A stretch of 63,496 nucleotides of DNA, counting the filler, from Octopus bimaculoides (Eukaryota), in the NCBI RefSeq assembly GCF_001194135.2. It is 7 parts of 7 records of this genome, joined end to end, with 100 filler letters (N's around TTAATTAATTAA, not from the genome) between each part and the next. Parts side by side here need not be neighbours in the genome. Positions count along the whole stretch, not along the records: positions 24,185 to 38,060 come from NC_069010.1; 6 more parts are not named here. One strand, 5' to 3'. The notes below the pieces were generated by a model. It was not told the DNA's origin, made no database searches, and saw only the letters and a program-made list of their open reading frames with translations. The translations under genes and the position numbers were made by a program. Positions 24,185 through 38,160 of the stretch are shown here, in pieces. Positions within the stretch are counted from its first letter, which is position 1. Each line of letters begins with the position of its first letter.

Positions 24185-24280
24185 CATTACATTTGACAGA
24201 GTAATGTGAATACTGAAGGGTTGAATGTTAAAGACCTCAAGAGTAAGCCCCGAAAGATCAGAAGACTAGAAAGCTAAACT

Positions 24281-24418
24281 GGAGTGGTTGGCGTTAGGAA
24301 GGGCATCCAGCTGTAGAAACTCTGCCAAATCAGATTGGAGCCTGGTGTAGCCATCTGGTTTCACCAGTCCTCAGTCAAATCGTCCAACCCATGCTAGCAT
24401 GGAAAGCGGATGTTAAAC

Positions 24419-24451
<33 letters not shown>
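24281..24451 (+). mobile_element. RTE-type LINE/SINE 3' tail ending in (GAT)n
   Basis: GGAGTGGTTGGCGTTAGGAAGGGCATCCAGCTGTAG...GGAAAGCGGATGTTAAACGATGATGAT. Near-identical copies at about 28975-29190 (-), 30420-30927 (+), 31190-31452 (-), 33990-34172 (-), 35520-36237 (+) and 50029-50340 (+). Confidence 0.75.
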
Positions 24452-24452
<1 letters not shown>

Positions 24453-24895
24453 GTTTTAAATTTATCCTTCATTATCGCATAGCTTCAACTCTGGAAAATT
24501 TTTACATGGTGATTATTTATTTTTAGAATGACATTGTAGGGTAGATATGAGAGGCCAGATTTGGCTGGTCTGAACATGAAACAGGTTGAATATTTGGGCC
24601 AGATATGGCCAATTTAAATGCCAAATGGTTAAAACAAGGGCTGGTTCACATGACATTTGGGCATGTCTACACACACTAGTTGTCCTATGTGATACATACC
24701 AAGGGATCAACTCTCTTCCAAGTCCTGTATGCCTTAATAACAGAACCCTCTTTTGCTGTCTAATCCACAACTGGAACTCTTGAAATGTACTCTAGGACAC
24801 AGCAAAACCAAGAAGTAGCTATGACTCAAGGGTTACTGCATGTTCCTTAAACTCTTGAACTTGCACGAGATGCAGTTTAGTGTCTTACTGATGAC

Positions 24896-24962
<67 letters not shown>

Positions 24963-25006
24963 NNNNNNNNNNTCACTCACACACAATCACACACTCACAC
25001 ACACTC

Positions 25007-25042
<36 letters not shown>

Positions 25043-25141
25043 TCATAAACCTTTCAACTATTTGTGTTCTTGTTTTGTTTTGTTTTGTTTCTTTTTCTTT
25101 ATTTTTCTCTCTCTCTCACTTTTGTTTTCTCTCTTTTCCAG

Positions 25142-25249
25142 CTGGAAAGTTGTGAGAAAGTGGAAGTGTCCATCAATGACACCCCTGTTACTGCTTCCTC
25201 TTCAAAATGGCACAACCCATTCCACAATGAGTACTATTCCCCTGTATGG
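25142..25249 (+). CDS. RABGGTA: Rab geranylgeranyltransferase subunit alpha, first exon visible here (Ig-like domain), phase 0 to 0
   Basis: TTTTCCAG acceptor. Reads LESCEKVEVSINDTPVTASSSKWHNPFHNEYYSPVW and is followed by ATATCCTTT. Splices in frame with five further exons matching the RABGGTA C-terminal half. Confidence 0.85.
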
Positions 25250-26888
25250 ATATCCTTTTGCTAAACTTCTACTACTACTACTAATAATAATAATAATTGT
25301 TGCAAATTTTAGCACAGGGCCAGAAATTTTGTAAGAGGATTAGTCAATTATATCGACCCTAGTACTTAACTGGTGTTTATTTTATCAATCTCGAAAAAAT
25401 GAAAGGCAGTCGCCCTCAGCAGAGTTTGAACTCAGAATGTAGAGTCAGAAGAAATGCTACTAGGCATTTTACCGGACACACTAATGATTCTGTCAGATCA
25501 CCACGATGATAATGATCCTTTCTACTAACGGTATAAGGTCTGAAATTTTGGGGGAGGGTACTAGTCAACTACATTGAACCCAGTGTTTCACTGGTACTTA
25601 ATTCAGCGGAATTTGAACTCGGAATGTAAGGACAGATGAAATGATGCTAAGCATTTTGCCCAGCATGCTAAAGATTCTGCCAGCTCAACACCATAATAAT
25701 AATAATAATAATAATAATAATCCTTTCTACTTTAGGCACAAGGATTGAAATTTTGAGGGTGGGGTCTAATCTATTACATCAACCCCAGTGTTTCACTGGT
25801 ATTTAATTTATTGACCCCGAAAGGCAAAGGATGAGCATTTTGTCCAGTGTGCTAATGATTCTTATTTCTTTACTGCCCACAAGGGGCTAGACGCAGAGGG
25901 GACAAACGGATTAAGTCAATTATATTGACCCCAGTGCGTAACTGGTACTTATTTAATTGACCCCGAAAGGATGAAAGGCAAAGTCAACCTCGGCGGAATT
26001 TGAACTCAGAACGTAGCGGCAGACGAAATACCGCTAAGCATTTCACCCAGCGTGCTAACGTTTCTGCCAGCTTGCTGCCAGTGTGCTAATGATTCTGCCA
26101 GCTCATCACCCTATTAATAATAATGATAATAACAATAAACATTATCAGCCACACATACTCAAAGTATGTACTTTGCTTGTTTGCTGGTAGGCTGCAATTT
26201 GGCATGGTGGGGATGACTCCCTCAAAGCACCAGGTGTTAAAAAAGCTGAAAGGCATATTTAGGTGAGACACCTTAACACCATGCTAAATCGTAGGGTGAA
26301 TACATTGTTTAGAACTCATCCTGAATTACCTTGTAGTTTTGAGATTTTGATGATGAACTCATCATTTAACATCTGTTTTTCCATGTTGGTATGGGTTAGA
26401 TGGTTTGATTGGAACTGGTAAGCCAGTGAGCTGCACCAAGTTCCAGTCAGATTTGGCATGGATTTCTATGGCTGGATGCCCTTTCTAATACCAACCACTC
26501 CAAGGTTGTATTGTGTACATTCTTAGTGTTGTTGGTGGTGGTGGTGGTAGCCAAGGTGGTCAGAGATGACCGTGATAGTAAGCAATGTGTAAGACTGTAG
26601 TGATCGTGGTGGAGGGGAAGAGCAGCATACCACCAAGGGTCTCGGTGACTTATCATCACCTTTGTAAGGCCCAACATGCTTCACCACCTGTCACAGGTGT
26701 GAGAGGTGAGGTCTGGTCAGTTTGAACATCAAACAGGGAGAATATTTGGGCTGGATATGGCTGGGTTAAAGGCTAAAGAGTTAATTGTGCCATTTGTTCT
26801 TATGAAATTTGCTTTCATCTACTGGTTCCATTCAGGTGTCCTGGACTTCAAATACATCTAACAACATTCTTTCCTTGACTCTCAGTAA
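25250..26888 (+). other. RABGGTA: U12-type intron, AT 5' end, apparent AA 3' end
   Basis: 5' site ATATCCTTTT at 25250; branch site TTCCTTGAC at 26871-26879. The in-frame junction nearest the branch site that avoids a stop follows ...CAGTAA at 26888. Confidence 0.7.
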
Positions 26889-27052
26889 ATTCTTCCCCTA
26901 CCGAAAGAGTTCTTGTCGGAAACTTCCCTGGACATCACAGTTAAACTTTACGCCAAATCAACGACTCTAGCAAGCTGTACCCTTTCGCTGAAAGAATCAA
27001 CAGACCGTATCTGCTATCGTTCTAATAACCTGAGGCCAGACACAATTTTCAA
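26889..27052 (+). CDS. RABGGTA: RABGGTA exon (Ig-like domain), phase 0 to 2
   Basis: ILPLPKEFLSETSLDITVKLYAKSTTLASCTLSLKESTDRICYRSNNLRPDTIF, then a GTTAGT donor. The 5' boundary depends on the U12 acceptor call. Confidence 0.75.
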
Positions 27053-27204
27053 GTTAGTTTTAGTTTTTATCTTTTACTTATTTCACTTGTTCGACTGCTG
27101 CCATGCTGGAGCACTGACCTGAAGGGCATAATCAAAGAAACTGGATCCCCAGTACTTATTTTTTTCAAGTTTACCACTTATTCTGTTAATCTTTTTTGCC
27201 AAAC

Positions 27205-27857
27205 TATCTGTTTGCATGTTTGTCTATCTATCTATCTATCTATCTCTCTATCTGACTATCTGTCAGTCTATCTATTCTGACTGTCTGTCTATCTATCTGA
27301 CTATGTCTGTCTGTTCGTCTGACTATGTCTGTCTGTTCGTCTGACTATGTCTGTCTGTTCGTCTGACTGTCAGTCAGTCCATCTGACTATGTCTGTCTGT
27401 CCGCCTGCCTGTCTATCTGACTATGTCTGCCGCCTGCCTGTCTGACGATGTCTGTCTATCTATCTAATGCATCCGACTGTTTGTTGTCTATATCTTCTCC
27501 CTGACTATGTCTGTTTATCCATCTATCTGTCTGTCTTTCAACCTCTCTCTCTGTTTATCTATCTATCTATCTATCTATCTGTCTGTCTGTCTGTCTGCCT
27601 GTCTGATTATCAATCTGTCTGTCTGTCTGTCTGCCTGTCTGATTATCTATCTGTCTGCCTGTCTGATTATCTATCTGTCTGCCTATCTGTCTGTCTGTCT
27701 GTCTGTCTGATTATCTATCTGTCTGCCTATCTGTCTGTCTGTCTCTCTGTCTGATTATCTGATTATCTATCTATCTATCTATCTATCTATCCGACTGTTT
27801 GTCTATCTATCTGTTTATTTATCTATTTTATTATCTATCTATCTCTCCATCTATCTA
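27205..27857. repeat. Compound (CTAT/CTGT)n microsatellite in a RABGGTA intron
   Basis: Directly visible. Confidence 0.9.
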
Positions 27858-27881
27858 TGTGTACCTTGCTGTATTTTTCAG

Positions 27882-27970
27882 CTCAGAACTTAGTGCTGCC
27901 AAAACTGCCATTTTAGCAAAAGAGTTGGAAGCCATTCAGGAACTGCTGCAACTGGAGACTGAGAACAAAT
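27882..27970 (+). CDS. RABGGTA: RABGGTA exon, phase 2 to 1
   Basis: TTTTTCAG acceptor, GTTAGT donor. (N)SELSAAKTAILAKELEAIQELLQLETENK(W) resembles vertebrate CELSVEKSTVLQSELESCKELQELEPENKW as I recall it. Confidence 0.92.
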
Positions 27971-28856
27971 GTTAGTGGTGTTACTCACATGTTATTGTTG
28001 TTACTGCTGTTGTTATTGAAGTTTTTTTAGCCCTAGGTCAGCCATGATCCAGCAAACCATCTAAAATCAAAGATGTCCTAGCTGTAACCATTCAGTTGTT
28101 TATTCAGACACAGTATATCTAGGACTACATTATCTAATGTGTCTTTTGTTATTGTTTAGCCCAAGGTCCATTCTGATCGAGCAGGCCTATGATCAGAGAC
28201 GTCCCAGCTGTAACCATCTGCTTTTTTATTCAGACATTATATATCTAAGATTACATTGACAAAGAACCAAGACAATTAGTGATTTGTTGTGCCTGAGAAA
28301 ACCTGCCCAGCTAAAAAAAAAAAAAAACCATACCATCCTTCCCTTCCCCATTTCCCCCCCACAATCTACCCTCTACTCCTGCTCACCCTCACTACCACCA
28401 CTATATTACTCTTCCTCCATTCTCTCTCATGTACCTACTTGCTCAAAGTATGTCCCTATTGACTCCCTTCCCCCCACAATGTATCCTCCTTATAACCCCT
28501 CCCTCTACCAGAGCCCACACCTTATATTCGACCTTCCCCACCTTCCAGCTCCCATTCTCCTTTTGCAATCATTTGAACTCACAATCCCGCCCCCGCCCAC
28601 TCCACTTCCTTAAATTCACTATATACACCACCCTGTAACTCGGGTGTATGGCCCCTGTCCCCTCCCATCACATTTTTCTCTTTCCCTCCTCTTCCTCTGA
28701 AGTTGCCATTTTTCTCTTCTAATCCAAGACACCTTCTCTGTCCCTCAGTACTACTACTCCCCCCAGTTGAGGTGGGAGGGCTTGTCCTGTAAGTTACTTG
28801 GGTCTCACTGCTGCTGGTGCCACATAAAAAAAAGGGCACCCCTCACCATACAATCT

Positions 28857-29311
28857 TTAACTCTTTAGCATTCATATTACTTTGTCAAATGTAATCCTCT
28901 TTTATTCAGATTGTTTTGAATTAATCCTGCATTTATCTGGTAGCTTTGAGATTTTGATGATGATGATGACGATCATCATCATCATCGTTTAACGTCCACT
29001 TTCCATGCTAGCATGGGTTGGACGATTTGACTGAGGACTGGTGAAACCAGATGGCAACACCAGGCTCCAATCTAATTTGGCAGAGTTTCTACAGCTGGAT
29101 GCCCTTCCTAACGCCAACCACTCAGAGAGTGTAGTGGGTGCTTTTACGTGTCACCCGCACGAAAACAGCCACGCTCGTGCGGGTGACACGTAAAAGCGAC
29201 AATATATTTTTAGAAAGACATTGTATGAGAGGCCAGATCTGGCCAGTTTGAACATAAAATAGGTAGAATATTTTGGCTAAATCTGGCCAGTTGAAATGCT
29301 TAAGGGCTCAA
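28857..29311. mobile_element. TTAA-flanked piggyBac-like MITE with a nested RTE tail insertion
   Basis: Starts TTAACTCTTTAGCATTC and ends GAAATGCTTAAGGGCTCAA. An RTE tail is inserted at about 28975-29190. Fragments of the same repeat at about 24510-24620 and 26720-26780. Confidence 0.4.
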
Positions 29312-29469
29312 GTGGTAAATGTTCACAAGGGCATCCAGCCATAGAAACCATGCAAAAACAGATAGCAAACCTTGGTACAGTCTTCTGACTTGCCAGTCCT
29401 TGTCAAACCATCCAACCCATGCCAGCATGGAAAACAAACCTTCATGCTGTTGCTGCTGCTGATGATATG

Positions 29470-29630
29470 TGGCTGTGTGGTAAGTAGCTTGCATACCAAC
29501 CACATGGTTCCGAGTTCATTCCCACTGTGTGGCACCTTGGGCAAGTGTCTTCTACTATAGCCTTGGGTCGACCAAAGCCTTGTGAGTGGATTTGGTAGAC
29601 GGAAACTGAAAGAAGCCCATCATATATATG

Positions 29631-29667
<37 letters not shown>

Positions 29668-29895
29668 GTATATGTATGTGTGTGTATATGTTTGTGTGTC
29701 TGTGTTTGTCCCCCCAACATCGCTTGACAACTGATGCTGGTGTGTTTACGTCCCCCGTAACTTAGCGGTTCGGCAAAAGAGATCGATAGAATAAGTACTA
29801 GGCTTGCAAAAGAATAAGTCCTGGGGTCGATTTGCTCAACTAAAAAGCGGTGCTCCAGCATGGCCGCAGTCAAATGACTGAAACAAGTAAACGAG
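29470..29895 (+). mobile_element. tRNA-derived SINE with an internal TA/TG microsatellite
   Basis: GGCTGTGTGGTAAGTAGC (A-box-like) and GGTTCCGAGTTCATTCCC (B-box-like). Other copies at about 55580-55945 (-), 58660-58770 (-) and 63130-63496 (-). Confidence 0.7.
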
Positions 29896-29916
29896 TAATG
29901 TATTCCATGTTTTATT

Positions 29917-30395
29917 TCTGTTTAGCCCTAGGTCAGTGTTTATCCAGCAGGCCTATTTTATGATCAAAGATGTTTCAGCTATAACCCTCCTGTCTTTTAT
30001 CCAGTCATAGCATATCTAGGACTACAAGGTTTCATGTGCCCATCCTTTTCTGTTGTTGTTTAACCCCAAGTCAGTTCTGATCTAACAGACTATGGTCAAA
30101 GGTGTTCCAACTGTGACCATCATGTCATTCAGGCATAGTGCATTGAGGACTACATTATTTAACATCCCTTTTTTTGTTGTTTAACCCCAGGTTGTTCCTA
30201 ATCCAGCAGGCCTATGATCATAGATGCTCCAGCGATGACCACCTTACTTTTTATTCAGATGCTATGTATCTAGGACTACATTATTTAACATGTCCGCTCT
30301 TGTAATTGTTGCTTAGCCCTAAGTTAGCAGACCTATGATCAAAGATGTTTCAACTGTGACCATCCTTTGTTATATTGAGTCATAGTATATCTCTC
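29917..30395. repeat. Tandem array of an approximately 120-bp unit (4 diverged copies; 2 more at 28023-28260)
   Basis: Unit resembles TTGTTTAGCCCCAGGTCAG...CAGACCTATGATCAAAGATGTT...CTAGGACTACATTAT. Confidence 0.75.
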
Positions 30396-31696
30396 TGGCA
30401 CTCCTTTGGTTATGACGTCAAGGGTTCCAGTTGATCTGATCAATGGAACAGCCTGCTTGTGATACTAATGTGCATGTTGACGACTGGCACCCATGCCAAC
30501 GTCGTCTCCTTCATTGGACACGAAACTCAGCTTGCGAAGACTTATTGGGGCAAGCGAAAGCGAAATCGGGATGGCACCTGTGCCCAGCGTCGCCTTTCTG
30601 GCACTTGTGCCCGTGACATGTGTAAGGATTTTCGAGCGAGATCGTTGCCAGTGCCCCTGGACTGGCTCTTATGCGGGTGACACATAAAATACACCATTTT
30701 GAGCGTGGCCATTGCCAGTACCGCCTGACTGGCCTTCGTGCTGGTGGCACGTAAAAAGCACCCACTACATTCTCGGAGTGGTTGGCGTTAGGAAGGGCAT
30801 CCAGCTGTAGAAACTCTGCCAAATTAGATTGGAGACTGGTGTTGCCATCCGGTTTCACCAGTCCTCAGTCAAATCGTCCAACCCATGCTAGCATGGAAAG
30901 CGGACGTTAAATGATGATGATGATGATGTGGCTGAGCACTCTAGGCACATGTACCCTCAACATAGTTCTCAAGATTTGGCGTGACACAGAATGCAACTAG
31001 GCTGGCTCTTTGAAATACAAGTACTACTCATTTTTGCTAGCTGAGTGGACTGGAGCAACATGAAATAAAGTGTCTTGCTGAAGGACATTATGCGTCACCA
31101 TGAATTGAACTTACGACCTTATGATCATAAGCCAAATACCTCTAACCACTAAGCCATATACCTTCACCATAGTATAATATCATCATCATTGTTTAACGTC
31201 CACTTTCCATGCTAGCATGGGTTGGACGATTTGACTGAGGACTGGTGAAACCAGATGGTTACGCCAGGCTCCAATCTGATTTGGCAGAGTTTCTACAGCT
31301 GGATGCCCTTCCTAACGCCAACCACTCAGAGAGTGTAATGGGTGCTTTTACGTGTCACCGGCACAAAGGCCAGTGAGGCGGTACTGACAACGGCCACGCT
31401 CAAAATGCTGTATTTTATGTGCCATCCACACAAGAGCCAGTCCAGGGGCACTAATGTGGCCTTCCTTGTGTGTGTGTGTGTGTGTGAGTGAGTGAATGAG
31501 TTCATATTCCTCTTTGTCTTCGTGTGTGTGTGTTTGTTGCTTGTAATTCTAACCCAATGGGCCATGCAAGCAAACACACATGCTCATACATACATTACAA
31601 AAAAGAGACGGTGAGAGATTTCATTAAGTTGATATGTATGAAATAAAAAAAAAAAGAAAAACCTTTTTAAGCCTATTTTCTTTATTTACCTTCCAG

Positions 31697-31825
31697 GGGC
31701 CATGTTGACTGTTGTGCAGTTGATGCAAGCATTGAATTCACAGCGCTATAGTGCAGACATGAATAACTATCTAAACACTCTGAGACAAATTGACCCCAAA
31801 CGAGACAATTACTACAAGGACTACA
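31697..31825 (+). CDS. RABGGTA: RABGGTA exon, phase 1 to 1
   Basis: CCTTCCAG acceptor, GTAAGT donor. Reads (W)AMLTVVQLMQALNSQRYSADMNNYLNTLRQIDPKRDNYYKDY. Confidence 0.92.
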
Positions 31826-32534
31826 GTAAGTTTATCCCAGTCATAGTAAATTGAGGCACACACCTGTGGGGTAGGAGTGTGGCCCATCCCACCTTCAATT
31901 TCTTTTCATTTTGTCTTTCAATTTTTGTTGTTTTTTCTTTGTGTTACTCAGTTTTTTCGTTTTGTTTTTGTTTTTTTTAAGCAAGCAGGTATTGGTATAG
32001 TTGTGGGTTTAAGAAATGTGCTTCCCAACCATAAGGTTTGAACTTTGAACTTTGACCCCCCCCCCCCTACATAGTAGAGGACACTTGCCCAAGATGCTAC
32101 AGTGGGACTGAANNNNNNNNNNCCCCCCCCCCCCTACATAGTAGAGGACACTTGCCCAAGATGCTACAGTGGGACTGAACCTGGAACAATGTGGTTGAGA
32201 AGCAAACTTCTTATCACACAGGCCACACCTGGCAAACTTTAGGTTACTTCAAAAATATGTTTGTGACATGTTTTGACTTCTAAAGGTAGATTCGTTACTG
32301 TTACCATGGAGTAAAAGTATTCAGATTCTCAGACATGATTCTAGCTATAATCCAGTAAGGGGTAGCACTGGGTAGATATGGTGTTAATACACCTTTTTTA
32401 CCATATGAGAGAATTTTTTTTCTCCACAGTAACTGCAGTAAATTTACATTTGGAAGTTGAAAGATATCACAAGCATATTTTAACTAACCTAAAGTTTGTT
32501 TATGCCTAAACACTGTTTAGCAATGGTACTGCTG

Positions 32535-32875
32535 AATATATATATATGCTGAGACCCCACTTCGGTCATAACTGACCATGAGATTGCACCTAGGAAGTTA
32601 CCCTCTCAGACACAGGTCCAGGCAAGGTTATTTTATGGAAGACCAGTAGTCGCCCATGCATACCGGCCTCCCCTCTCCACGCCACCAGTGTTATCCAAGG
32701 GAAAGGCAAAGGGGCTGATACAGCTTGGCACCTGTGACGTTGCAACTCATTTCTACAGCTGAGTGAACTGGAGCAATATGTGAAGTGTCTCGCTCAAGAA
32801 CACAACACACAGCCCGGTCTGGGACAACCTCCCGATCGTAAACTTGATGCTCTGACCACTGAGCCATGTGCCTTC

Positions 32876-32878
<3 letters not shown>
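32535..32878 (-). mobile_element. tRNA-derived SINE (second family)
   Basis: Minus strand starts GTGAAGGCACATGGCTCAGTGGTCAGAGC (A box). A related head lies at about 30930-31150. Confidence 0.6.
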
Positions 32879-32910
<32 letters not shown>

Positions 32911-33203
32911 TGAGGGTAGAAATTGATATTAATCAATTAAAACCAGTGGTCTAGAATATTAAAAAATCCGAGGATTAAAATNNNNNNNNNNTTACATACA
33001 AAAATAAGAGGAATGACCAGCAAATGTGGATTCCTATATGCTAGAAATAGATGCCGAATCATCTAACCACGAAAAAAATATGTTCTCAGTAGAAAATTTA
33101 GCAACACATTTTTTTCGTGGTTAGATGATTCGGCATCTATTTCTAGCATATAGGAATCCACATTTGCTAGTCATTCCTCTTATTTTTGTATGTAATATAT
33201 ATG

Positions 33204-33237
<34 letters not shown>

Positions 33238-34350
33238 ATAAAAGAATATCATTTGAAGAGGAAGATGAAAGTAGAGAATGATGCTGTTGCCTTCAAATGA
33301 ATTTATTGAAAGGTAGATGAGAGTGGGAAAACCTGCAAGGCCAAATGGGCCTACTCTAAATGTGCTTTGCTAAGGAATGAACTGGAAGAGAGCTCTTTCA
33401 ATGTAGGGGTTTCCCCCAGATTACCCTAAGTGGACTACCCCGCTATTGGAGATCCTATATATTTATTTTTCTGAATCCTATTTTGGGATCTCTTGTTATA
33501 TCCTTATTTTTATCTTCTTTTGATTGCATTTTATTTCATGTTTTGATATATAGTCTTTAATGTCTTGGGCCCTTCTGGGCAATAAAAAAAAAAATCATCA
33601 TTATTTTTATCATTATTCCATCAAGGTCAACTTGGTCTCTGAAATCGACTTCAACTGTTCCCCCAAAATTGCTGGCTTTGTGCTAAAATTCGAAGGTGTT
33701 TATTATTCATCATCATACATCTGTTGTCCATGCTGGCGTGGATTGGACAGTTCGATAATTATTATGAGTTTTGTATGTTTGACTGTAAATGTAACTAGAC
33801 ATAAACAACGACAATCTCTTCTGGATGAGAGCAGATCCTCAGAGGCCAACTTATAAAACCTGGCTCTTTGTCCCTGCTTCTCAGGTTCTCAAACCAAGCA
33901 GATAAGGTTCTGTTAGGGCACTCGACAAGCATTGCTACAGATTGAGGAACTCTATGATGGAAGTTATGCGTTTGATTGGTGCACCATCATCATCATCATC
34001 ATCGTTTAACGTCCGCTTTCCATGCTAGCATGGGTTGGACGATTTGACTGAGGACTGGTGAACCAGGGTGGCTACACCAGACTCCAGTCTGATTTGGTAT
34101 GGTTTCTACAGCTGGATGCCCTTCCCTAATGCCAACCACTCCGAGAGTGTAGTGGGTGCTTTTACGTGCCTAAGGCAGTGAGCTGGTGGAATTGTTAGCA
34201 TGCGGGGCAAAATGCTTTGTGGCATTTCATCTGTCCTTACATTCTGAGTTTAAATGCCACTGAGGTCAATAAAATAAGTACCAGCTGGACACTGGGGGTC
34301 ATTGCAATCGACTTACCCCCTCTTCCTAACTTGCTGGTTTTGTGCCAAAA

Positions 34351-35178
34351 TTATTATTATTATTGTTAAGTAGTTTTATTTTTATAACGTGCTTTCACTG
34401 CACTACCGAGCGCAGCTCTGTGTGCCTTGGGTATGTGCTGTGGTTTGCTGTGATGCTCTTATGGTTACTGTATTGAAAGTGTTTTGCCTAGGATGTGTGC
34501 AGTGCCCAGTAGTGCTATTTTCTGTATGTTATATATATTTGTAAGTCCTGGTGTTTTTGTTATGTATTTGTCTGAATAATTTTTTTATTATACCTAAGGC
34601 ACCTACTATGATAGGAATTGTTTCTGTTTTTAGATTCCACATTCGAGTTACCTCTATTTCCAGGTCTTTGTATTTTGAAAGTTTTTCCATTTCTTTTAGG
34701 GAAACGTTGTCATCTGCTGGTATTGATACATCAATTAGAAAGCATTTTTTTTTCTTCATGATCTTTGACAACTATATCTGGTCTATTTGCCTTAATTTCT
34801 CTATCTGTGTGTGTGTGTGTTGTTATTATTATTATTATTATTATTCAGTAGTCTTATTTTTATCATGTGCTTTCACTGCACTACTGAGCATAGTTCTGTG
34901 TGTTCTATGGTTTGTTGTGATGCTCTTCTTTTTACTGTATTGAAGTGTTTTATGTAGGATGTGTGCAGTACCTAGTAGTGCTATTTTCTGTATGTTATAT
35001 ATATTTGTTAGTCTTGGTGTTTTTGTTATGTATTTGTCTGAATGTTTTTTTGTTTTTTTTTATCATACTAATGCGCCTCTTATGATAGTTGTTTCTGTTT
35101 TTAGACTCCACATTCAAGTTAACTCTATTTCCAGGTCTTTGTATTTTAAAAGTTTCTCCATTTCTTTTAGAGAAACTT
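34351..35178 (-). mobile_element. Two head-to-tail 3' fragments of an R4/Dong/Rex6-like RLE LINE, each with an (AAT)n tail
   Basis: ORF 34529-34771 (-) reads CFLIDVSIPADDNVSLKEMEKLSKYKDLEIEVTRMWNLKTETIPIIVGALG, a restriction-like endonuclease motif. Second copy at about 34823-35178. Confidence 0.75.
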
Positions 35179-35201
35179 TATTATTACCTTTTGTATTTCA
35201 G

Positions 35202-35474
35202 AAAGTAAAGTGACGATAGAAAATCAGATCAAATCCATGGGTGGTAGTCAAGCCAAACTTGTACTCAAGGGTCTTGACCTTTCTACAATGTATCATCTGG
35301 AGCATCTGGTATCACTGCAAGAGTTGGACCTGTCTTCTAACAATATTTCACATCTGCACACATTTGCCTATCTGCAGAGTGTGGAATCGCTAGATCTGGA
35401 CCACAACAAGATAAACTGCATTGAGGGCCTTGGACTTCTTCCTAATCTCACGCACCTCTCGATACGCCATAACT
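35202..35474 (+). CDS. RABGGTA: RABGGTA exon (leucine-rich repeats), phase 1 to 1
   Basis: TTTCAG acceptor. Reads (K)SKVTIENQIKSMGG...LQELDLSSNNISHL...LDLDHNKINCIEGLGLLPNLTHLSIRHN, followed by GTATCCTTG. Confidence 0.93.
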
Positions 35475-37262
35475 GTATCCTTGACTTATGTATCTACATA
35501 TTTTTGTTTTCATTCTCTCCTTTCATCATCATCATTCTGATGTCCACTTTTCCACACTTACATAAGTCCGACGGAATTGATTCTATGGTCAGATGCCTTT
35601 CCTGTTTCAAACCTTCACCTGTTTCCATGTAAGATAACATTTCCCCATCGGCAGGCCAAGTGAGACCTAAATCCAAGGCCTCTGCCAGGGGTGTAGCCAG
35701 CCCACTTATGCGTACCTTTCCTTCATTGGACACTAAACTCCGCTTGCGAAGACCTGTTGAGGCAAGTGAAATTGAAATTGAACTAAATTCGACGACTGGC
35801 ACCCATGCCAACGTCGTCTCCTTCATTGGACACGAAACTCAGCTTGCAAAGACTTATTGGGGCAAGCGAAAGCGAAATCGGGATGGCACCTGTGCCCAGC
35901 GTCGCCTTTCTGGCACTTACGCCTGCAGCATGTGTAAGGACTTTCGAGCGAGATCGTTGCCAGTGCCCCTCGACTGGCTCTTGTGTGGGTGGCACTTAAA
36001 ATACACCATTTTGAGCGTGGCCGTTGCCAGTATCGCCTGACTGGCCTTCATGCGGGTGACACGTAAAAGCACCTACTACACTCTCGGAGTGGTTGGCGTT
36101 AGGAAGGGCATCCAGCTGTAGAAACTCTGCCAAATCAGATTGGAGCTTGGTGTAGCCTTCGGGCTCCACCAGTCCTCAGTCAAATCGTCCAACCCATGCT
36201 AGCATGGAAAGCGGATGTTAAACGATGATGATGATGACCAGACATGACTTCACAGAAGATAGAAAAACAAACAACATTGCTTGCACTACAATGACACTTG
36301 TTTACAACTACCACACAAAGTCAGGACAAAGAGATAACACACATAAGCTTCTTTCAGTTTCCATTGACCAAATCTACTTACAAGGCTTTAGTCAATCCAG
36401 TGCTATAGTCTAAGCTACTTGCCCAAAGTGCAGTAGAGCAGCAGGCTTCCTACCACACAGTCATGCCTGCACCTGTGTGTGTTTGCCTCCTTGTCATCAC
36501 ATGATCATACACAAAGCCTTATTCGTTTCCAATAATCTGTGAAACCAGTTTGCTTGGAAACAGGTAATTCCTAATGGCAGGACTGACATATCATCATCAT
36601 CATCATCATCATTTAACGTCCACCTTTCCTGCTGGCATAGGTTGGGCAGTTTGTCAAGAGCCTGCACCATACTTCTGTGTCTGTTTTGGTATGGTTTTTA
36701 TGGCTGGATGCCCTTCCCAACACCAGCCACTCTACAGAGTGGACTGAGTGCTTTTTCCATGGCACCAGCATAGGTGGGGTTAATTTTGGCATGGTGGATG
36801 CCCTTTCAAATGCCAACCACTTTACAGTGTGGACTGGATGTTTTTTAAGTAGCCAGAGAAAATCTGCCTCAAATTAATTCCATCAGTCCCATGGAGAAAT
36901 GGTCTTTAAAATAATGATAGTGATGAGGGCATGTGTGTGTGTGCGTGTGTGCGTGCCTAGGTGAATAGTTTCATTCTGTAGGCTCTGACAAATTGCTGAG
37001 CAACAGATAATGGCCTTTGTTGATATTTTCCATTCAACAAATTGTTTAGTAGCTCTGTGCTTCCAAAGTCAAGTGTTATAAAAACTCTTTTACTTGAAAA
37101 AAACAGACAAGGGTTAGTGAAAGGAAAGGCATTTGGCCACACAACACCTCAATATGATGTATTCCTCTAACCCATGCTAGCATGGAAAATTGAACATAAA
37201 ATGAATGAATAAATTTACAATTTGATCACAGGTTGTTTTTCCTTAACCCATTTAAACCACAG
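35475..37262 (+). other. RABGGTA: U12-type GT-AG intron
   Basis: 5' site GTATCCTTG; branch site TTTTCCTTAAC at 37237-37247; AG at 37261-37262; no polypyrimidine tract between branch site and AG. Confidence 0.9.
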
Positions 37263-37426
37263 GCCTGTTGAAAGTTGATGATCTCCGACCACTCCAGTCC
37301 TGTGCGGCTCTGAAAGAACTCAATCTGGAAGGGAACACTCTCACGGAAGATGACACGGACTATCGGAATTCTGTACAACAGCTTCTGCCACAGCTGACGC
37401 ACATTGACAGCAACCCAATAAACTAA
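37263..37426 (+). CDS. RABGGTA: RABGGTA terminal coding exon
   Basis: (C)LLKVDDLRPLQSCAALKELNLEGNTLTEDDTDYRNSVQQLLPQLTHIDSNPIN then TAA. This is the final LRR plus LRR cap. Confidence 0.92.
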
Positions 37427-38160
37427 GACACTTGACAGACAAGAAGAAGCATCAGCAGCAAGTATGACATTAATTAGTCTTCAGAAAGGAAGAAAAACGT
37501 TGGATAATGTAACCCTAAATTTATGACTGATGTATAAAAGAAGAATGGTCGTTGTTGGTGGAGAATTGTATGTGCAAGTTGACCTATCCTGGAGCTAAAT
37601 AGAACCAGAAGTACAGTATTATTTACTTACATTGGCAACAAGGTCACAGGATCTCGGAATAAAATTCTGTATGTTGTTGTGGCTTTATCTTTCTTTTTCT
37701 TCTTTTCTCATTTCATACTTTAACTTGTCAACGTCTTACCTGCATTTTCCACTATCTCTCTCTCAATAGTGATTATTGTTTAGTCTTGCAAGTTACTCGG
37801 TAACACCACTAGTGTTAGTGTCATAAATTTAGGGTTACATTATCCAACGTTTTTCTTCCTTTCTGAAGACTAATTAATGTCATACTTGCTGCTGATGCTT
37901 CTTCTTGTCTGTTGATGTGTTTACGTCCCCGTCACTTAGCGGTTCAACAAAAAAGACCAATAGAATAAGTACTAGGCTTACAAAGAATAAGTCCTGGAGT
38001 CAATTTGTTCAACTAAAGGCAATGCTCCAGCATGGCTGCAGTCAAATGACTGAAATGTGTNNNNNNNNNNNNNNNNNNNNNNNNNNNNNNNNNNNNNNNN
38101 NNNNTTAATTAATTAANNNNNNNNNNNNNNNNNNNNNNNNNNNNNNNNNNNNNNNNNNNN

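What the first reader, a model, noticed from the sequence alone, without database searches (positions are those of the whole stretch)
25250..26888. U12 intron with apparent AT-AA termini in RABGGTA
Seen: a perfect AT-type minor donor (TGG|ATATCCTTTT, phase 0) and a U12 branch site TTCCTTGAC 10 nt upstream of ...CAGTAA|ATT. The nearer AG (26884-26885) puts TAA in frame; the AC at 26900-26901 shifts the frame. An AG at 26908-26909 is in frame but 31 nt from the branch A and deletes ILPLPKE. The AA junction gives VW-ILPLPKEFL, which aligns with vertebrate VW-LCDLPAASL as I recall it. Established: U12 3' sites are set largely by distance from the branch point, and AT-AA ends are rare variants of AT-AC. 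Inefficient or ambiguous 3' choice could regulate Rab prenylation capacity (inference).
Basis: partly seen in the sequence, partly recalled or inferred. Interest (0 to 1): 0.75.

Follow-up and report, generated by a model that had tools for sequence, protein, structure and literature searches.

The report
Octopus RABGGTA minor intron, AT-AA ends
This is a genuine minor-spliceosome (U12-type) intron in the octopus Rab geranylgeranyl-transferase alpha gene whose last base has changed from C to A; it is a known, rare variant already reflected in the public gene model, and nothing suggests a special function.

Summary
The piece is the 3' half of Octopus bimaculoides RABGGTA. Window 25250-26888 is an intron that starts with a perfect U12 donor (TGG|ATATCCTTTT). 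It has a U12 branch site TTCCTTGAC (branch A 26878) 10 nt before its last base and ends in AA. Joining 25249 to 26889 is the only junction within 27 nt of the branch A that keeps the frame open. The resulting 308-aa model is 100% identical to RefSeq XP_052834101.1. The terminal A is not an assembly error, because O. vulgaris and O. sinensis genomes carry identical intron ends. The same intron position (VW|, phase 0) holds an AT-AC U12 intron in a cuttlefish and a land snail, both with the same 10-nt spacing. It holds a GT-AG U12 intron in a brachiopod, a hemichordate and a manta ray; human intron 9, by the literature, is of the same type. A chiton has a U2-type intron there, and Argonauta has none. 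So the Octopus intron is an AT-AC intron with a terminal C-to-A change. AT-AA is the commonest non-canonical minor-intron class. The finding is real but ordinary. Its practical relevance is for annotation: the O. vulgaris model is distorted at this junction.

The parts
25142..25249 (+). Upstream coding exon of RABGGTA (LESCEKVEVSINDTPVTASSSKWHNPFHNEYYSPVW), ending in phase 0
   Evidence: Acceptor ttttccag| and translation; 100% identical to XP_052834101.1 residues 267-302
25250..25258 (+). U12 A-type 5' splice site ATATCCTTT
   Evidence: Sequence; identical in O. vulgaris, O. sinensis, cuttlefish and land snail; GTATCCTT in Lingula, Ptychodera and Mobula
25250..26888 (+). U12-type intron, 1639 nt, AT-AA termini
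   Evidence: Only junction within 27 nt of the branch A that keeps the frame open; matches RefSeq proteins
25270..26143 (+). Interior of the intron: three or so degenerate copies of a SINE-like repeat with (TAA)n tracts; not coding
   Evidence: Direct repeat families D1-D5; interior does not align between Octopus species, whose introns are 1639, 1425 and 702 nt
26871..26879 (+). U12 branch-point sequence TTCCTTGAC, branch A at 26878
   Evidence: Sequence; TCCTTGAC also in cuttlefish and TCCTTAAC in land snail, at the same 10-nt distance
26884..26888 (+). AG (26884-85), 7 nt from the branch A, followed by TAA, whose last two bases (26887-88) are the AA intron terminus
   Evidence: using the AG gives an immediate in-frame stop; using AA gives an open frame
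26889..27052 (+). Downstream coding exon (ILPLPKEFLSETS...PDTIF, ends in phase 2; donor CAA|gttagt)
   Evidence: 7 of 9 differences from O. vulgaris are synonymous in this frame, including both in the ILPLPKE codons

Best explanation
Window 25250-26888 is a minor-spliceosome (U12-dependent) intron of the A-type in Octopus bimaculoides RABGGTA, which encodes the alpha subunit of Rab geranylgeranyltransferase. It lies inside the Ig-like insert domain.

Proposed mechanism:
- U11, and later U6atac, recognise the ATATCCTTT donor (inferred).
- U12 pairs with TTCCTTGAC, bulging A26878 as the branch point (inferred).
- The 3' cleavage site is taken at the first usable position about 10 nt downstream, which here ends in AA instead of AC (inferred).
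- Exons join 25249 to 26889, giving ...YYSPVW-ILPLPKEFL... (shown).

The intron is the orthologue of the U12 intron 9 of human RABGGTA. The position held a GT-AG U12 intron in early bilaterians and became AT-AC in the gastropod/cephalopod lineage. In the Octopus lineage its last base changed from C to A. It was lost outright in Argonauta and converted to U2-type in a chiton.

Shown here: the sequence signals, their conservation, the reading-frame logic, agreement with public protein models, and the orthology. Inferred: the snRNP dependence and the splicing efficiency.
For: - Signals and frame.
- Protein identity: the model is 100% identical to RefSeq XP_052834101.1 (O. bimaculoides) over 308 aa. 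O. sinensis XP_029653078.1 and an older UniParc entry carry the same VWILPLPKEFL junction.
- Rat RabGGTase alpha aligns without a gap across the junction.
- Intron ends are identical in O. vulgaris and O. sinensis genomes.
- Cuttlefish and land-snail orthologous introns are canonical AT-AC, with branch A to 3' end = 10 nt, as in Octopus.
- Lingula, Ptychodera and Mobula have GTATCCTT...AG at the same codon boundary.
- Human RABGGTA intron 9 is an experimentally handled U12 GT-AG intron with GG before the GT, which fits TGG| (PMC10853781).
- Argonauta hians has the two exons fused (...HSPVWTLDLPPQLL...), collinear with VW-ILPLPKEFL without an indel.
- Literature: AT-AA is the commonest non-canonical minor-intron type (PMC10639083; PMC1557818). 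AT-AN introns form the A-type class (PMC8280824). The branch-to-3' distance optimum is short, 11-13 nt (PMC3584512).
Against: - No RNA reads could be examined. The junction rests on protein models (which I infer, without having checked, to be transcript-supported), on frame logic and on comparative data.
- Ten nt is at the short edge of the published 11-13 nt optimum.
- AA at 26888-89 (11 nt) and AT at 26889-90 (12 nt) are possible out-of-frame competitors.
- The O. vulgaris public model avoids this junction. This is either an annotation workaround or, less likely, a real cryptic U2-type isoform.
Confidence: 0.9

Rival explanations
1. The productive junction is real, but 3' site choice is sloppy. 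A sizeable share of transcripts would use AG 26885 (giving an in-frame TAA), AA 26889 or AT 26890 (frameshifts), or would retain the intron. The AT-AA site would then act as a brake on RABGGTA expression.
For: Three candidate AN sites lie 10, 11 and 12 nt from the branch A and only the first is in frame; an AG lies 3 nt upstream. U12 3' site selection is described as error-prone, and non-canonical termini often splice less efficiently (PMC3584512). A-type introns have higher basal retention (PMC8280824).
Against: There are no expression data. The same AT repeat and 10-nt spacing exist in the canonical AT-AC orthologues, so the spacing is inherited rather than newly evolved. Argonauta simply lost the intron, and minor-intron changes are largely explained by neutral processes (PMC10639083). 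The AG at 7 nt is too close to the branch site, and AT-AG combinations are disfavoured.
Confidence: 0.1
2. The true acceptor is the in-frame AG at 26908-09, giving an AT-AG intron of 1660 nt. ILPLPKE would then be intronic.
For: AG is a commoner terminal dinucleotide, and the frame stays open.
Against: It lies 31 nt from the branch A, far beyond the 11-13 nt optimum. It deletes 7 residues that are present and collinear in rat, Argonauta, cuttlefish and the RefSeq Octopus proteins. Both O. bimaculoides/O. vulgaris differences within these 21 nt are synonymous third-position changes.
Confidence: 0.02
3. The terminal A at 26888 is an assembly or sequencing error and the intron is an ordinary AT-AC intron.
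For: The O. bimaculoides assembly has small N gaps nearby. Related species (cuttlefish, snail) have AC.
Against: Two independent assemblies of other Octopus species (GCA_951406725.2 and GCA_006345805.1) have the identical 19 nt TTCCTTGACTCTCAGTAA before the exon.
Confidence: 0.01
4. The region is spliced by the major spliceosome through GT-AG sites, as in the O. vulgaris public model. That model uses donor CCT|GTATGG (25244), a 49-nt mini exon (window 26835-26883), donor CTCA|GTAAAT, and an acceptor inside the downstream exon. The product is ...SPV-SWTSNTSNNILSLTL-NTIFN....
For: A public protein has exactly this structure, rebuilt from the genome. Cryptic U2-type sites are known to be activated around minor introns (PMC8280824).
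Against: It removes 36 residues net from the insert domain. It translates the U12 branch site and intron tail in a frame with no similarity to any orthologue. The two other Octopus RefSeq models use the AT-AA junction on identical splice-site sequence.
Confidence: 0.03

Closest known systems
U12-type intron 9 of human RABGGTA (between exons 9 and 10)
   Same: Same gene. Judging from the GG|GT context (PMC10853781) and from the Mobula genomic sequence, it sits at the same codon boundary (VW|, phase 0). Same kind of donor (RTATCCTT) and a U12 branch site close to the 3' end.
   Different: The human and other deuterostome introns are GT-AG; the Octopus one is AT-AA. I did not see the human genomic sequence itself; a vertebrate (Mobula) stood in for it.
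Canonical AT-AC U12 introns; the orthologous introns of Acanthosepion pharaonis and Bradybaena similaris
   Same: Identical donor TGG|ATATCCTTTT, branch site TCCTTRAC, and 10 nt from branch A to the intron end.
   Different: The last base is A instead of C. In Octopus the five bases before the exon are AGTAA; in the cuttlefish they are TTGAC.
Known AT-AA minor introns (e.g. human and mouse RASGRP4; MSH3 is AT-AA in human and AT-AC in mouse); A-type AT-AN class
   Same: Same non-canonical terminal pair on a U12 donor and branch site. The MSH3 case shows the same AT-AC/AT-AA switch between related species (PMC1557818; PMC8280824; PMC10639083).
   Different: Different gene and lineage. Splicing of the Octopus intron has not been assayed.

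Membership tests
U12-type (minor spliceosome) intron | 5' splice site matching |RTATCCTTT | tested here: met
   ATATCCTTT at 25250-25258, 9 of 9
U12-type (minor spliceosome) intron | Branch-point sequence TCCTTRAC close to the 3' end (optimum 11-13 nt), with no need for a long polypyrimidine tract | tested here: met
   TTCCTTGAC at 26871-26879; branch A is 10 nt before the last intron base; distance rule from PMC3584512
U12-type (minor spliceosome) intron | Orthologous introns at the same position are U12-type in distant species | tested here: met
   Cuttlefish, land snail, Lingula, Ptychodera and Mobula have U12-type signals at VW|, phase 0; the human intron 9 is treated as U12-type in PMC10853781
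U12-type (minor spliceosome) intron | Excision depends on U11, U12, U4atac and U6atac snRNPs | not testable with these tools
   Needs knock-down or a minigene assay
AT-AA subtype of A-type minor introns | Intron begins with AT and ends with AA at the junction actually used in mRNA | tested here: inconclusive
   The junction agrees with RefSeq proteins of two Octopus species and an older UniParc entry, and with frame logic. No RNA reads were examined, and the AT repeat makes the border assignment rest on the donor consensus.
AT-AA subtype of A-type minor introns | The terminal A is genomic, not an error | tested here: met
   Identical in three Octopus assemblies
RABGGTA (Rab geranylgeranyltransferase alpha subunit) | Insert (Ig-like) domain, helical region and C-terminal LRR domain collinear with known RabGGTase alpha | tested here: met
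   1dce_A residues 284-564, E 9e-38; 100% identical to XP_052834101.1. The Pfam RabGGT_insert match is weak on its own (E 0.052).

The most novel reading that the evidence does not exclude
In Octopus the C-to-A change at the intron's last base left an AG 3 nt upstream (leading to an in-frame TAA) and out-of-frame AA and AT sites 1-2 nt downstream. This could make the minor-intron 3' choice partly unproductive. RABGGTA output, and with it Rab prenylation capacity, would then be tuned by minor-spliceosome activity in an Octopus-specific way.
Probability: 0.07. Interest if true: 0.45.

Novelty: new member of a known kind. Interest (0 to 1): 0.2.

Why it matters
The main value is for annotation quality and as a tidy example of minor-intron evolution.

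One intron position in one gene shows every known fate of a U12 intron:
- GT-AG in a brachiopod, a hemichordate and a vertebrate
- AT-AC in a snail and a cuttlefish
- AT-AA in Octopus
- conversion to U2-type in a chiton
- precise loss in Argonauta

The practical point is that pipelines accepting only GT-AG, GC-AG and AT-AC can mis-model this gene. The public O. vulgaris protein lacks a net 36 residues of the insert domain because of such a workaround. Nothing here bears on an open question, and no new mechanism is implied.

Tried and rejected
- A 91-aa query spanning the junction found nothing in the word-indexed protein search, even though close relatives exist. That was a sensitivity limit of the index, not absence.
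- Argopecten gave no genomic record.
- Dietrich et al. 2005 and Levine & Durbin 2001, the primary papers on AT-AN termini, are not held in the library. I cite them only through reviews.
- Rfam and tRNA scans of the whole piece found nothing, so no snoRNA or other RNA gene sits in the intron.
- A hidden exon inside the intron was considered and rejected. The alignment to rat and Argonauta is collinear with no missing residues. The interior is repeat DNA that does not align between Octopus species, and the O. sinensis intron is only 702 nt.
- Elevated conservation of the last ~270 nt of the intron (88-96% against O. vulgaris) was considered as a sign of a regulatory element. Exons are 94-97% identical and other alignable intron stretches 84-93%, so with two close species it is not distinguishable from background.

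Full report
**What is in the window.** The usable piece (24185-38060) carries the 3' half of a RABGGTA gene on the + strand. I built an exon model from open frames and splice signals: 25142-25249, 26889-27052, 27882-27970, 31697-31825, 35202-35474 and 37263-37426, with the stop codon at 37424-37426. It reads as a single 308-codon frame.

The product matches rat Rab geranylgeranyltransferase alpha (1dce_A residues 284-564, E 9e-38). The alignment is ungapped across the junction in question: VW-ILPLPKEFL against VW-LCDLPAASL. The model is 100% identical to residues 267-574 of RefSeq XP_052834101.1 of Octopus bimaculoides, which identifies the source species.

**Check of the observation.**
- The upstream exon ends ...CCT GTA TGG in phase 0 and is followed by ATATCCTTTTGC, with A at 25250.
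- TTCCTTGAC lies at 26871-26879, with the branch A at 26878.
- The intron ends ...CTCAGTAA at 26888, and the next exon starts ATT CTT CCC CTA CCG AAA GAG.

I tabulated every possible 3' border from 26880 to 26924 with the donor fixed at 25250:

| Last two intron bases | Distance from branch A | Result |
|---|---|---|
| AG 26884-85 | 7 nt | immediate in-frame TAA |
| AA 26887-88 | 10 nt | open frame through to the natural stop |
| AA 26888-89 | 11 nt | frameshift |
| AT 26889-90 | 12 nt | frameshift |
| AC 26900-01 | 23 nt | frameshift |
| AG 26908-09 | 31 nt | in frame, deletes ILPLPKE |

The motifs are each expected less than once per strand in this piece: 0.47 for ATATCCTT and 0.13 for TTCCTTRAC. 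Their placement exactly at the two exon borders is therefore not chance.

Three intron placements give the same mRNA. The AT-AA assignment rests on the invariant position of cleavage before ATATCC.

**Is the terminal A real?** Yes. The O. vulgaris chromosome assembly (L001) and the O. sinensis assembly (L006) carry the same donor and the same 19 nt, TTCCTTGACTCTCAGTAA, before ATTCTTCC. Their introns differ in length (1639, 1425 and 702 nt), and the interiors are SINE-like repeats that do not align.

In the downstream exon, 7 of the 9 differences between O. bimaculoides and O. vulgaris are synonymous in the proposed frame. These include both differences inside the ILPLPKE codons.

**Is the AA junction the one used?** I could not look at RNA reads. 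The indirect evidence is consistent:
- RefSeq proteins of O. bimaculoides (XP_052834101.1) and O. sinensis (XP_029653078.1), and an older UniParc entry, all read ...YYSPVWILPLPKEFL....
- The octopod Argonauta hians has no intron here. One exon encodes ...HSPVWTLDLPPQLLVDES..., which is collinear with VW-ILPLPKEFL without an indel. Precise intron loss is generally attributed to recombination with a reverse-transcribed mRNA, so this sequence acts as a fossil of the spliced junction (inference).
- Cuttlefish proteins, including contigs from the Logan assemblies of public sequencing runs (their 2-3.5 kb lengths suggest transcripts), read ...HSPVWIMLLPDG....

**Where it comes from.** I fetched the orthologous genomic region from nine other species and read the borders. 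At the same codon boundary (W|, phase 0):

| Species | Group | Intron at this position |
|---|---|---|
| Acanthosepion pharaonis | cuttlefish | TGG\|ATATCCTTTT...TCCTTGACTCTCTTGAC\|ATT; canonical AT-AC, branch A 10 nt from the end |
| Bradybaena similaris | land snail | TGG\|ATATCCTTTT...TCCTTAACACGAGAAAC\|ATA; AT-AC, also 10 nt |
| Lingula | brachiopod | GTATCCTT...AG; U12 GT-AG |
| Ptychodera | hemichordate | GTATCCTT...AG; U12 GT-AG |
| Mobula | manta ray | GTATCCTT...AG; U12 GT-AG |
| Liolophura | chiton | GTAAGT...TAG; U2-type |
| Argonauta hians | octopod | no intron |
| Octopus vulgaris, O. sinensis | octopods | AT-AA, same ends as the window |

Human RABGGTA intron 9 is handled experimentally as a U12 GT-AG intron with G at positions -1 and -2, which fits TGG| (PMC10853781).

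The simplest history is as follows. A GT-AG U12 intron in early bilaterians switched to AT-AC before gastropods and cephalopods split. The terminal C then changed to A in the lineage leading to the three Octopus species; the last five bases are AGTAA where the cuttlefish has TTGAC. The 10-nt spacing was inherited, not newly created.

**How it most likely works.** This is standard minor-spliceosome splicing.
- The donor and branch site are recognised by U11/U12.
- The 3' site is chosen mainly by its short distance from the branch site.
- The last base is tolerant of change when the first base is A.

These points come from the literature. Non-canonical termini support U12 splicing, often less efficiently, and the distance optimum is 11-13 nt (PMC3584512). 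AT-AN introns form the A-type class (PMC8280824). AT-AA was already found in human, mouse and Arabidopsis, including an AT-AA/AT-AC switch in MSH3 (PMC1557818). It is the commonest non-canonical minor-intron type in animals and plants (PMC10639083).

The AG 3 nt upstream is probably ignored. It is only 7 nt from the branch A, and AT-AG pairs are disfavoured (inference for this intron).

**The regulatory idea.** Out-of-frame AA and AT sites do lie at 11 and 12 nt, which is nominally closer to the published optimum, and A-type introns are retained more often. Some unproductive splicing therefore cannot be excluded.

Nothing points to selection for it, however. The spacing and the AT repeat are shared with the canonical orthologues. 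One octopod has dispensed with the intron altogether. The broad survey attributes most minor-intron change to neutral processes. I give this reading about 0.1.

**Annotation consequence.** The public O. vulgaris protein (538 aa) reads ...YYSPV-SWTSNTSNNILSLTL-NTIFN.... I rebuilt it exactly from the genome. It uses four GT-AG sites, a 49-nt mini exon made of the intron's last bases (including the branch site), and a 13-nt micro exon. This discards most of the real downstream exon. On identical splice-site sequence, the two other Octopus models use the AT-AA junction. The O. vulgaris model is therefore most likely an artefact of avoiding a non-consensus splice, though a minor cryptic U2-type isoform cannot be ruled out without reads.

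**Verdict.** The finding is real and correctly interpreted, but ordinary. It is an orthologue of a known U12 intron carrying the commonest non-canonical terminal pair, and it is already implicit in RefSeq. I found no paper describing it. Interest is 0.2.

Noticed in passing
window 35475-37262 (+): A second U12-type intron in the same gene, of GT-AG type: AAC T|GTATCCTTGAC ... TTTTTCCTTAAC, 15 nt from branch A to CAG|GC, phase 1. The donor GTATCCTT at the same codon position is present in O. vulgaris, O. sinensis, Argonauta, cuttlefish, land snail and manta ray. RABGGTA therefore carries two ancient minor introns. The paper I read on the human gene mentions only intron 9.
   Followed up: partly
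L001 16210-16258 and 16414-16426 (O. vulgaris); window equivalents 26835-26883 and 27040-27052: The public O. vulgaris RABGGTA protein (538 aa) is built from an all-GT-AG path with a 49-nt mini exon taken from the intron tail and a 13-nt micro exon. It is a net 36 residues shorter than the other Octopus models. It looks like an annotation workaround for the AT-AA junction.
   Followed up: yes
L002 12547-12837 (Argonauta hians): The two exons flanking the Octopus AT-AA intron are fused into one exon, a precise loss of the first U12 intron within Octopoda. The second U12 intron is kept (L002 17541).
   Followed up: partly
L007 8009-10412 (Liolophura sinensis, chiton): The same intron position has GTAAGT...TAG, a U2-type intron, which suggests U12-to-U2 conversion in this lineage.
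   Followed up: no
L004, L005, L007, L008, L009 (first ~60-400 nt of each locus): An OTU-domain gene (Pfam OTU, with Peptidase_C65 faint in four of the five) lies head-to-head immediately upstream of RABGGTA in land snail, cuttlefish, chiton, Lingula and Ptychodera. This is a conserved gene pair across distant phyla.
   Followed up: no
window 24281-24435, 28962-29155, 30643-30926, 31179-31449, 33988-34170, 35952-36237: Copies of interspersed repeats, in both orientations, each matching several places in the O. vulgaris locus at 78-88% identity. The introns of this gene are largely repeat DNA. Separate SINE-like units also fill the AT-AA intron (25270-26143).
   Followed up: no
window 24903-25042: A long (CA)n microsatellite interrupted by a 10-N assembly gap (24963-24972) about 100 nt upstream of the exon at 25142. 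Further 10-N gaps lie at 32113-32122 and 32982-32991.
   Followed up: no
window 26620-26888: The last ~270 nt of the AT-AA intron are 88-96% identical to O. vulgaris, while the rest of the intron does not align. With only close species available, this cannot be told apart from background similarity.
   Followed up: partly
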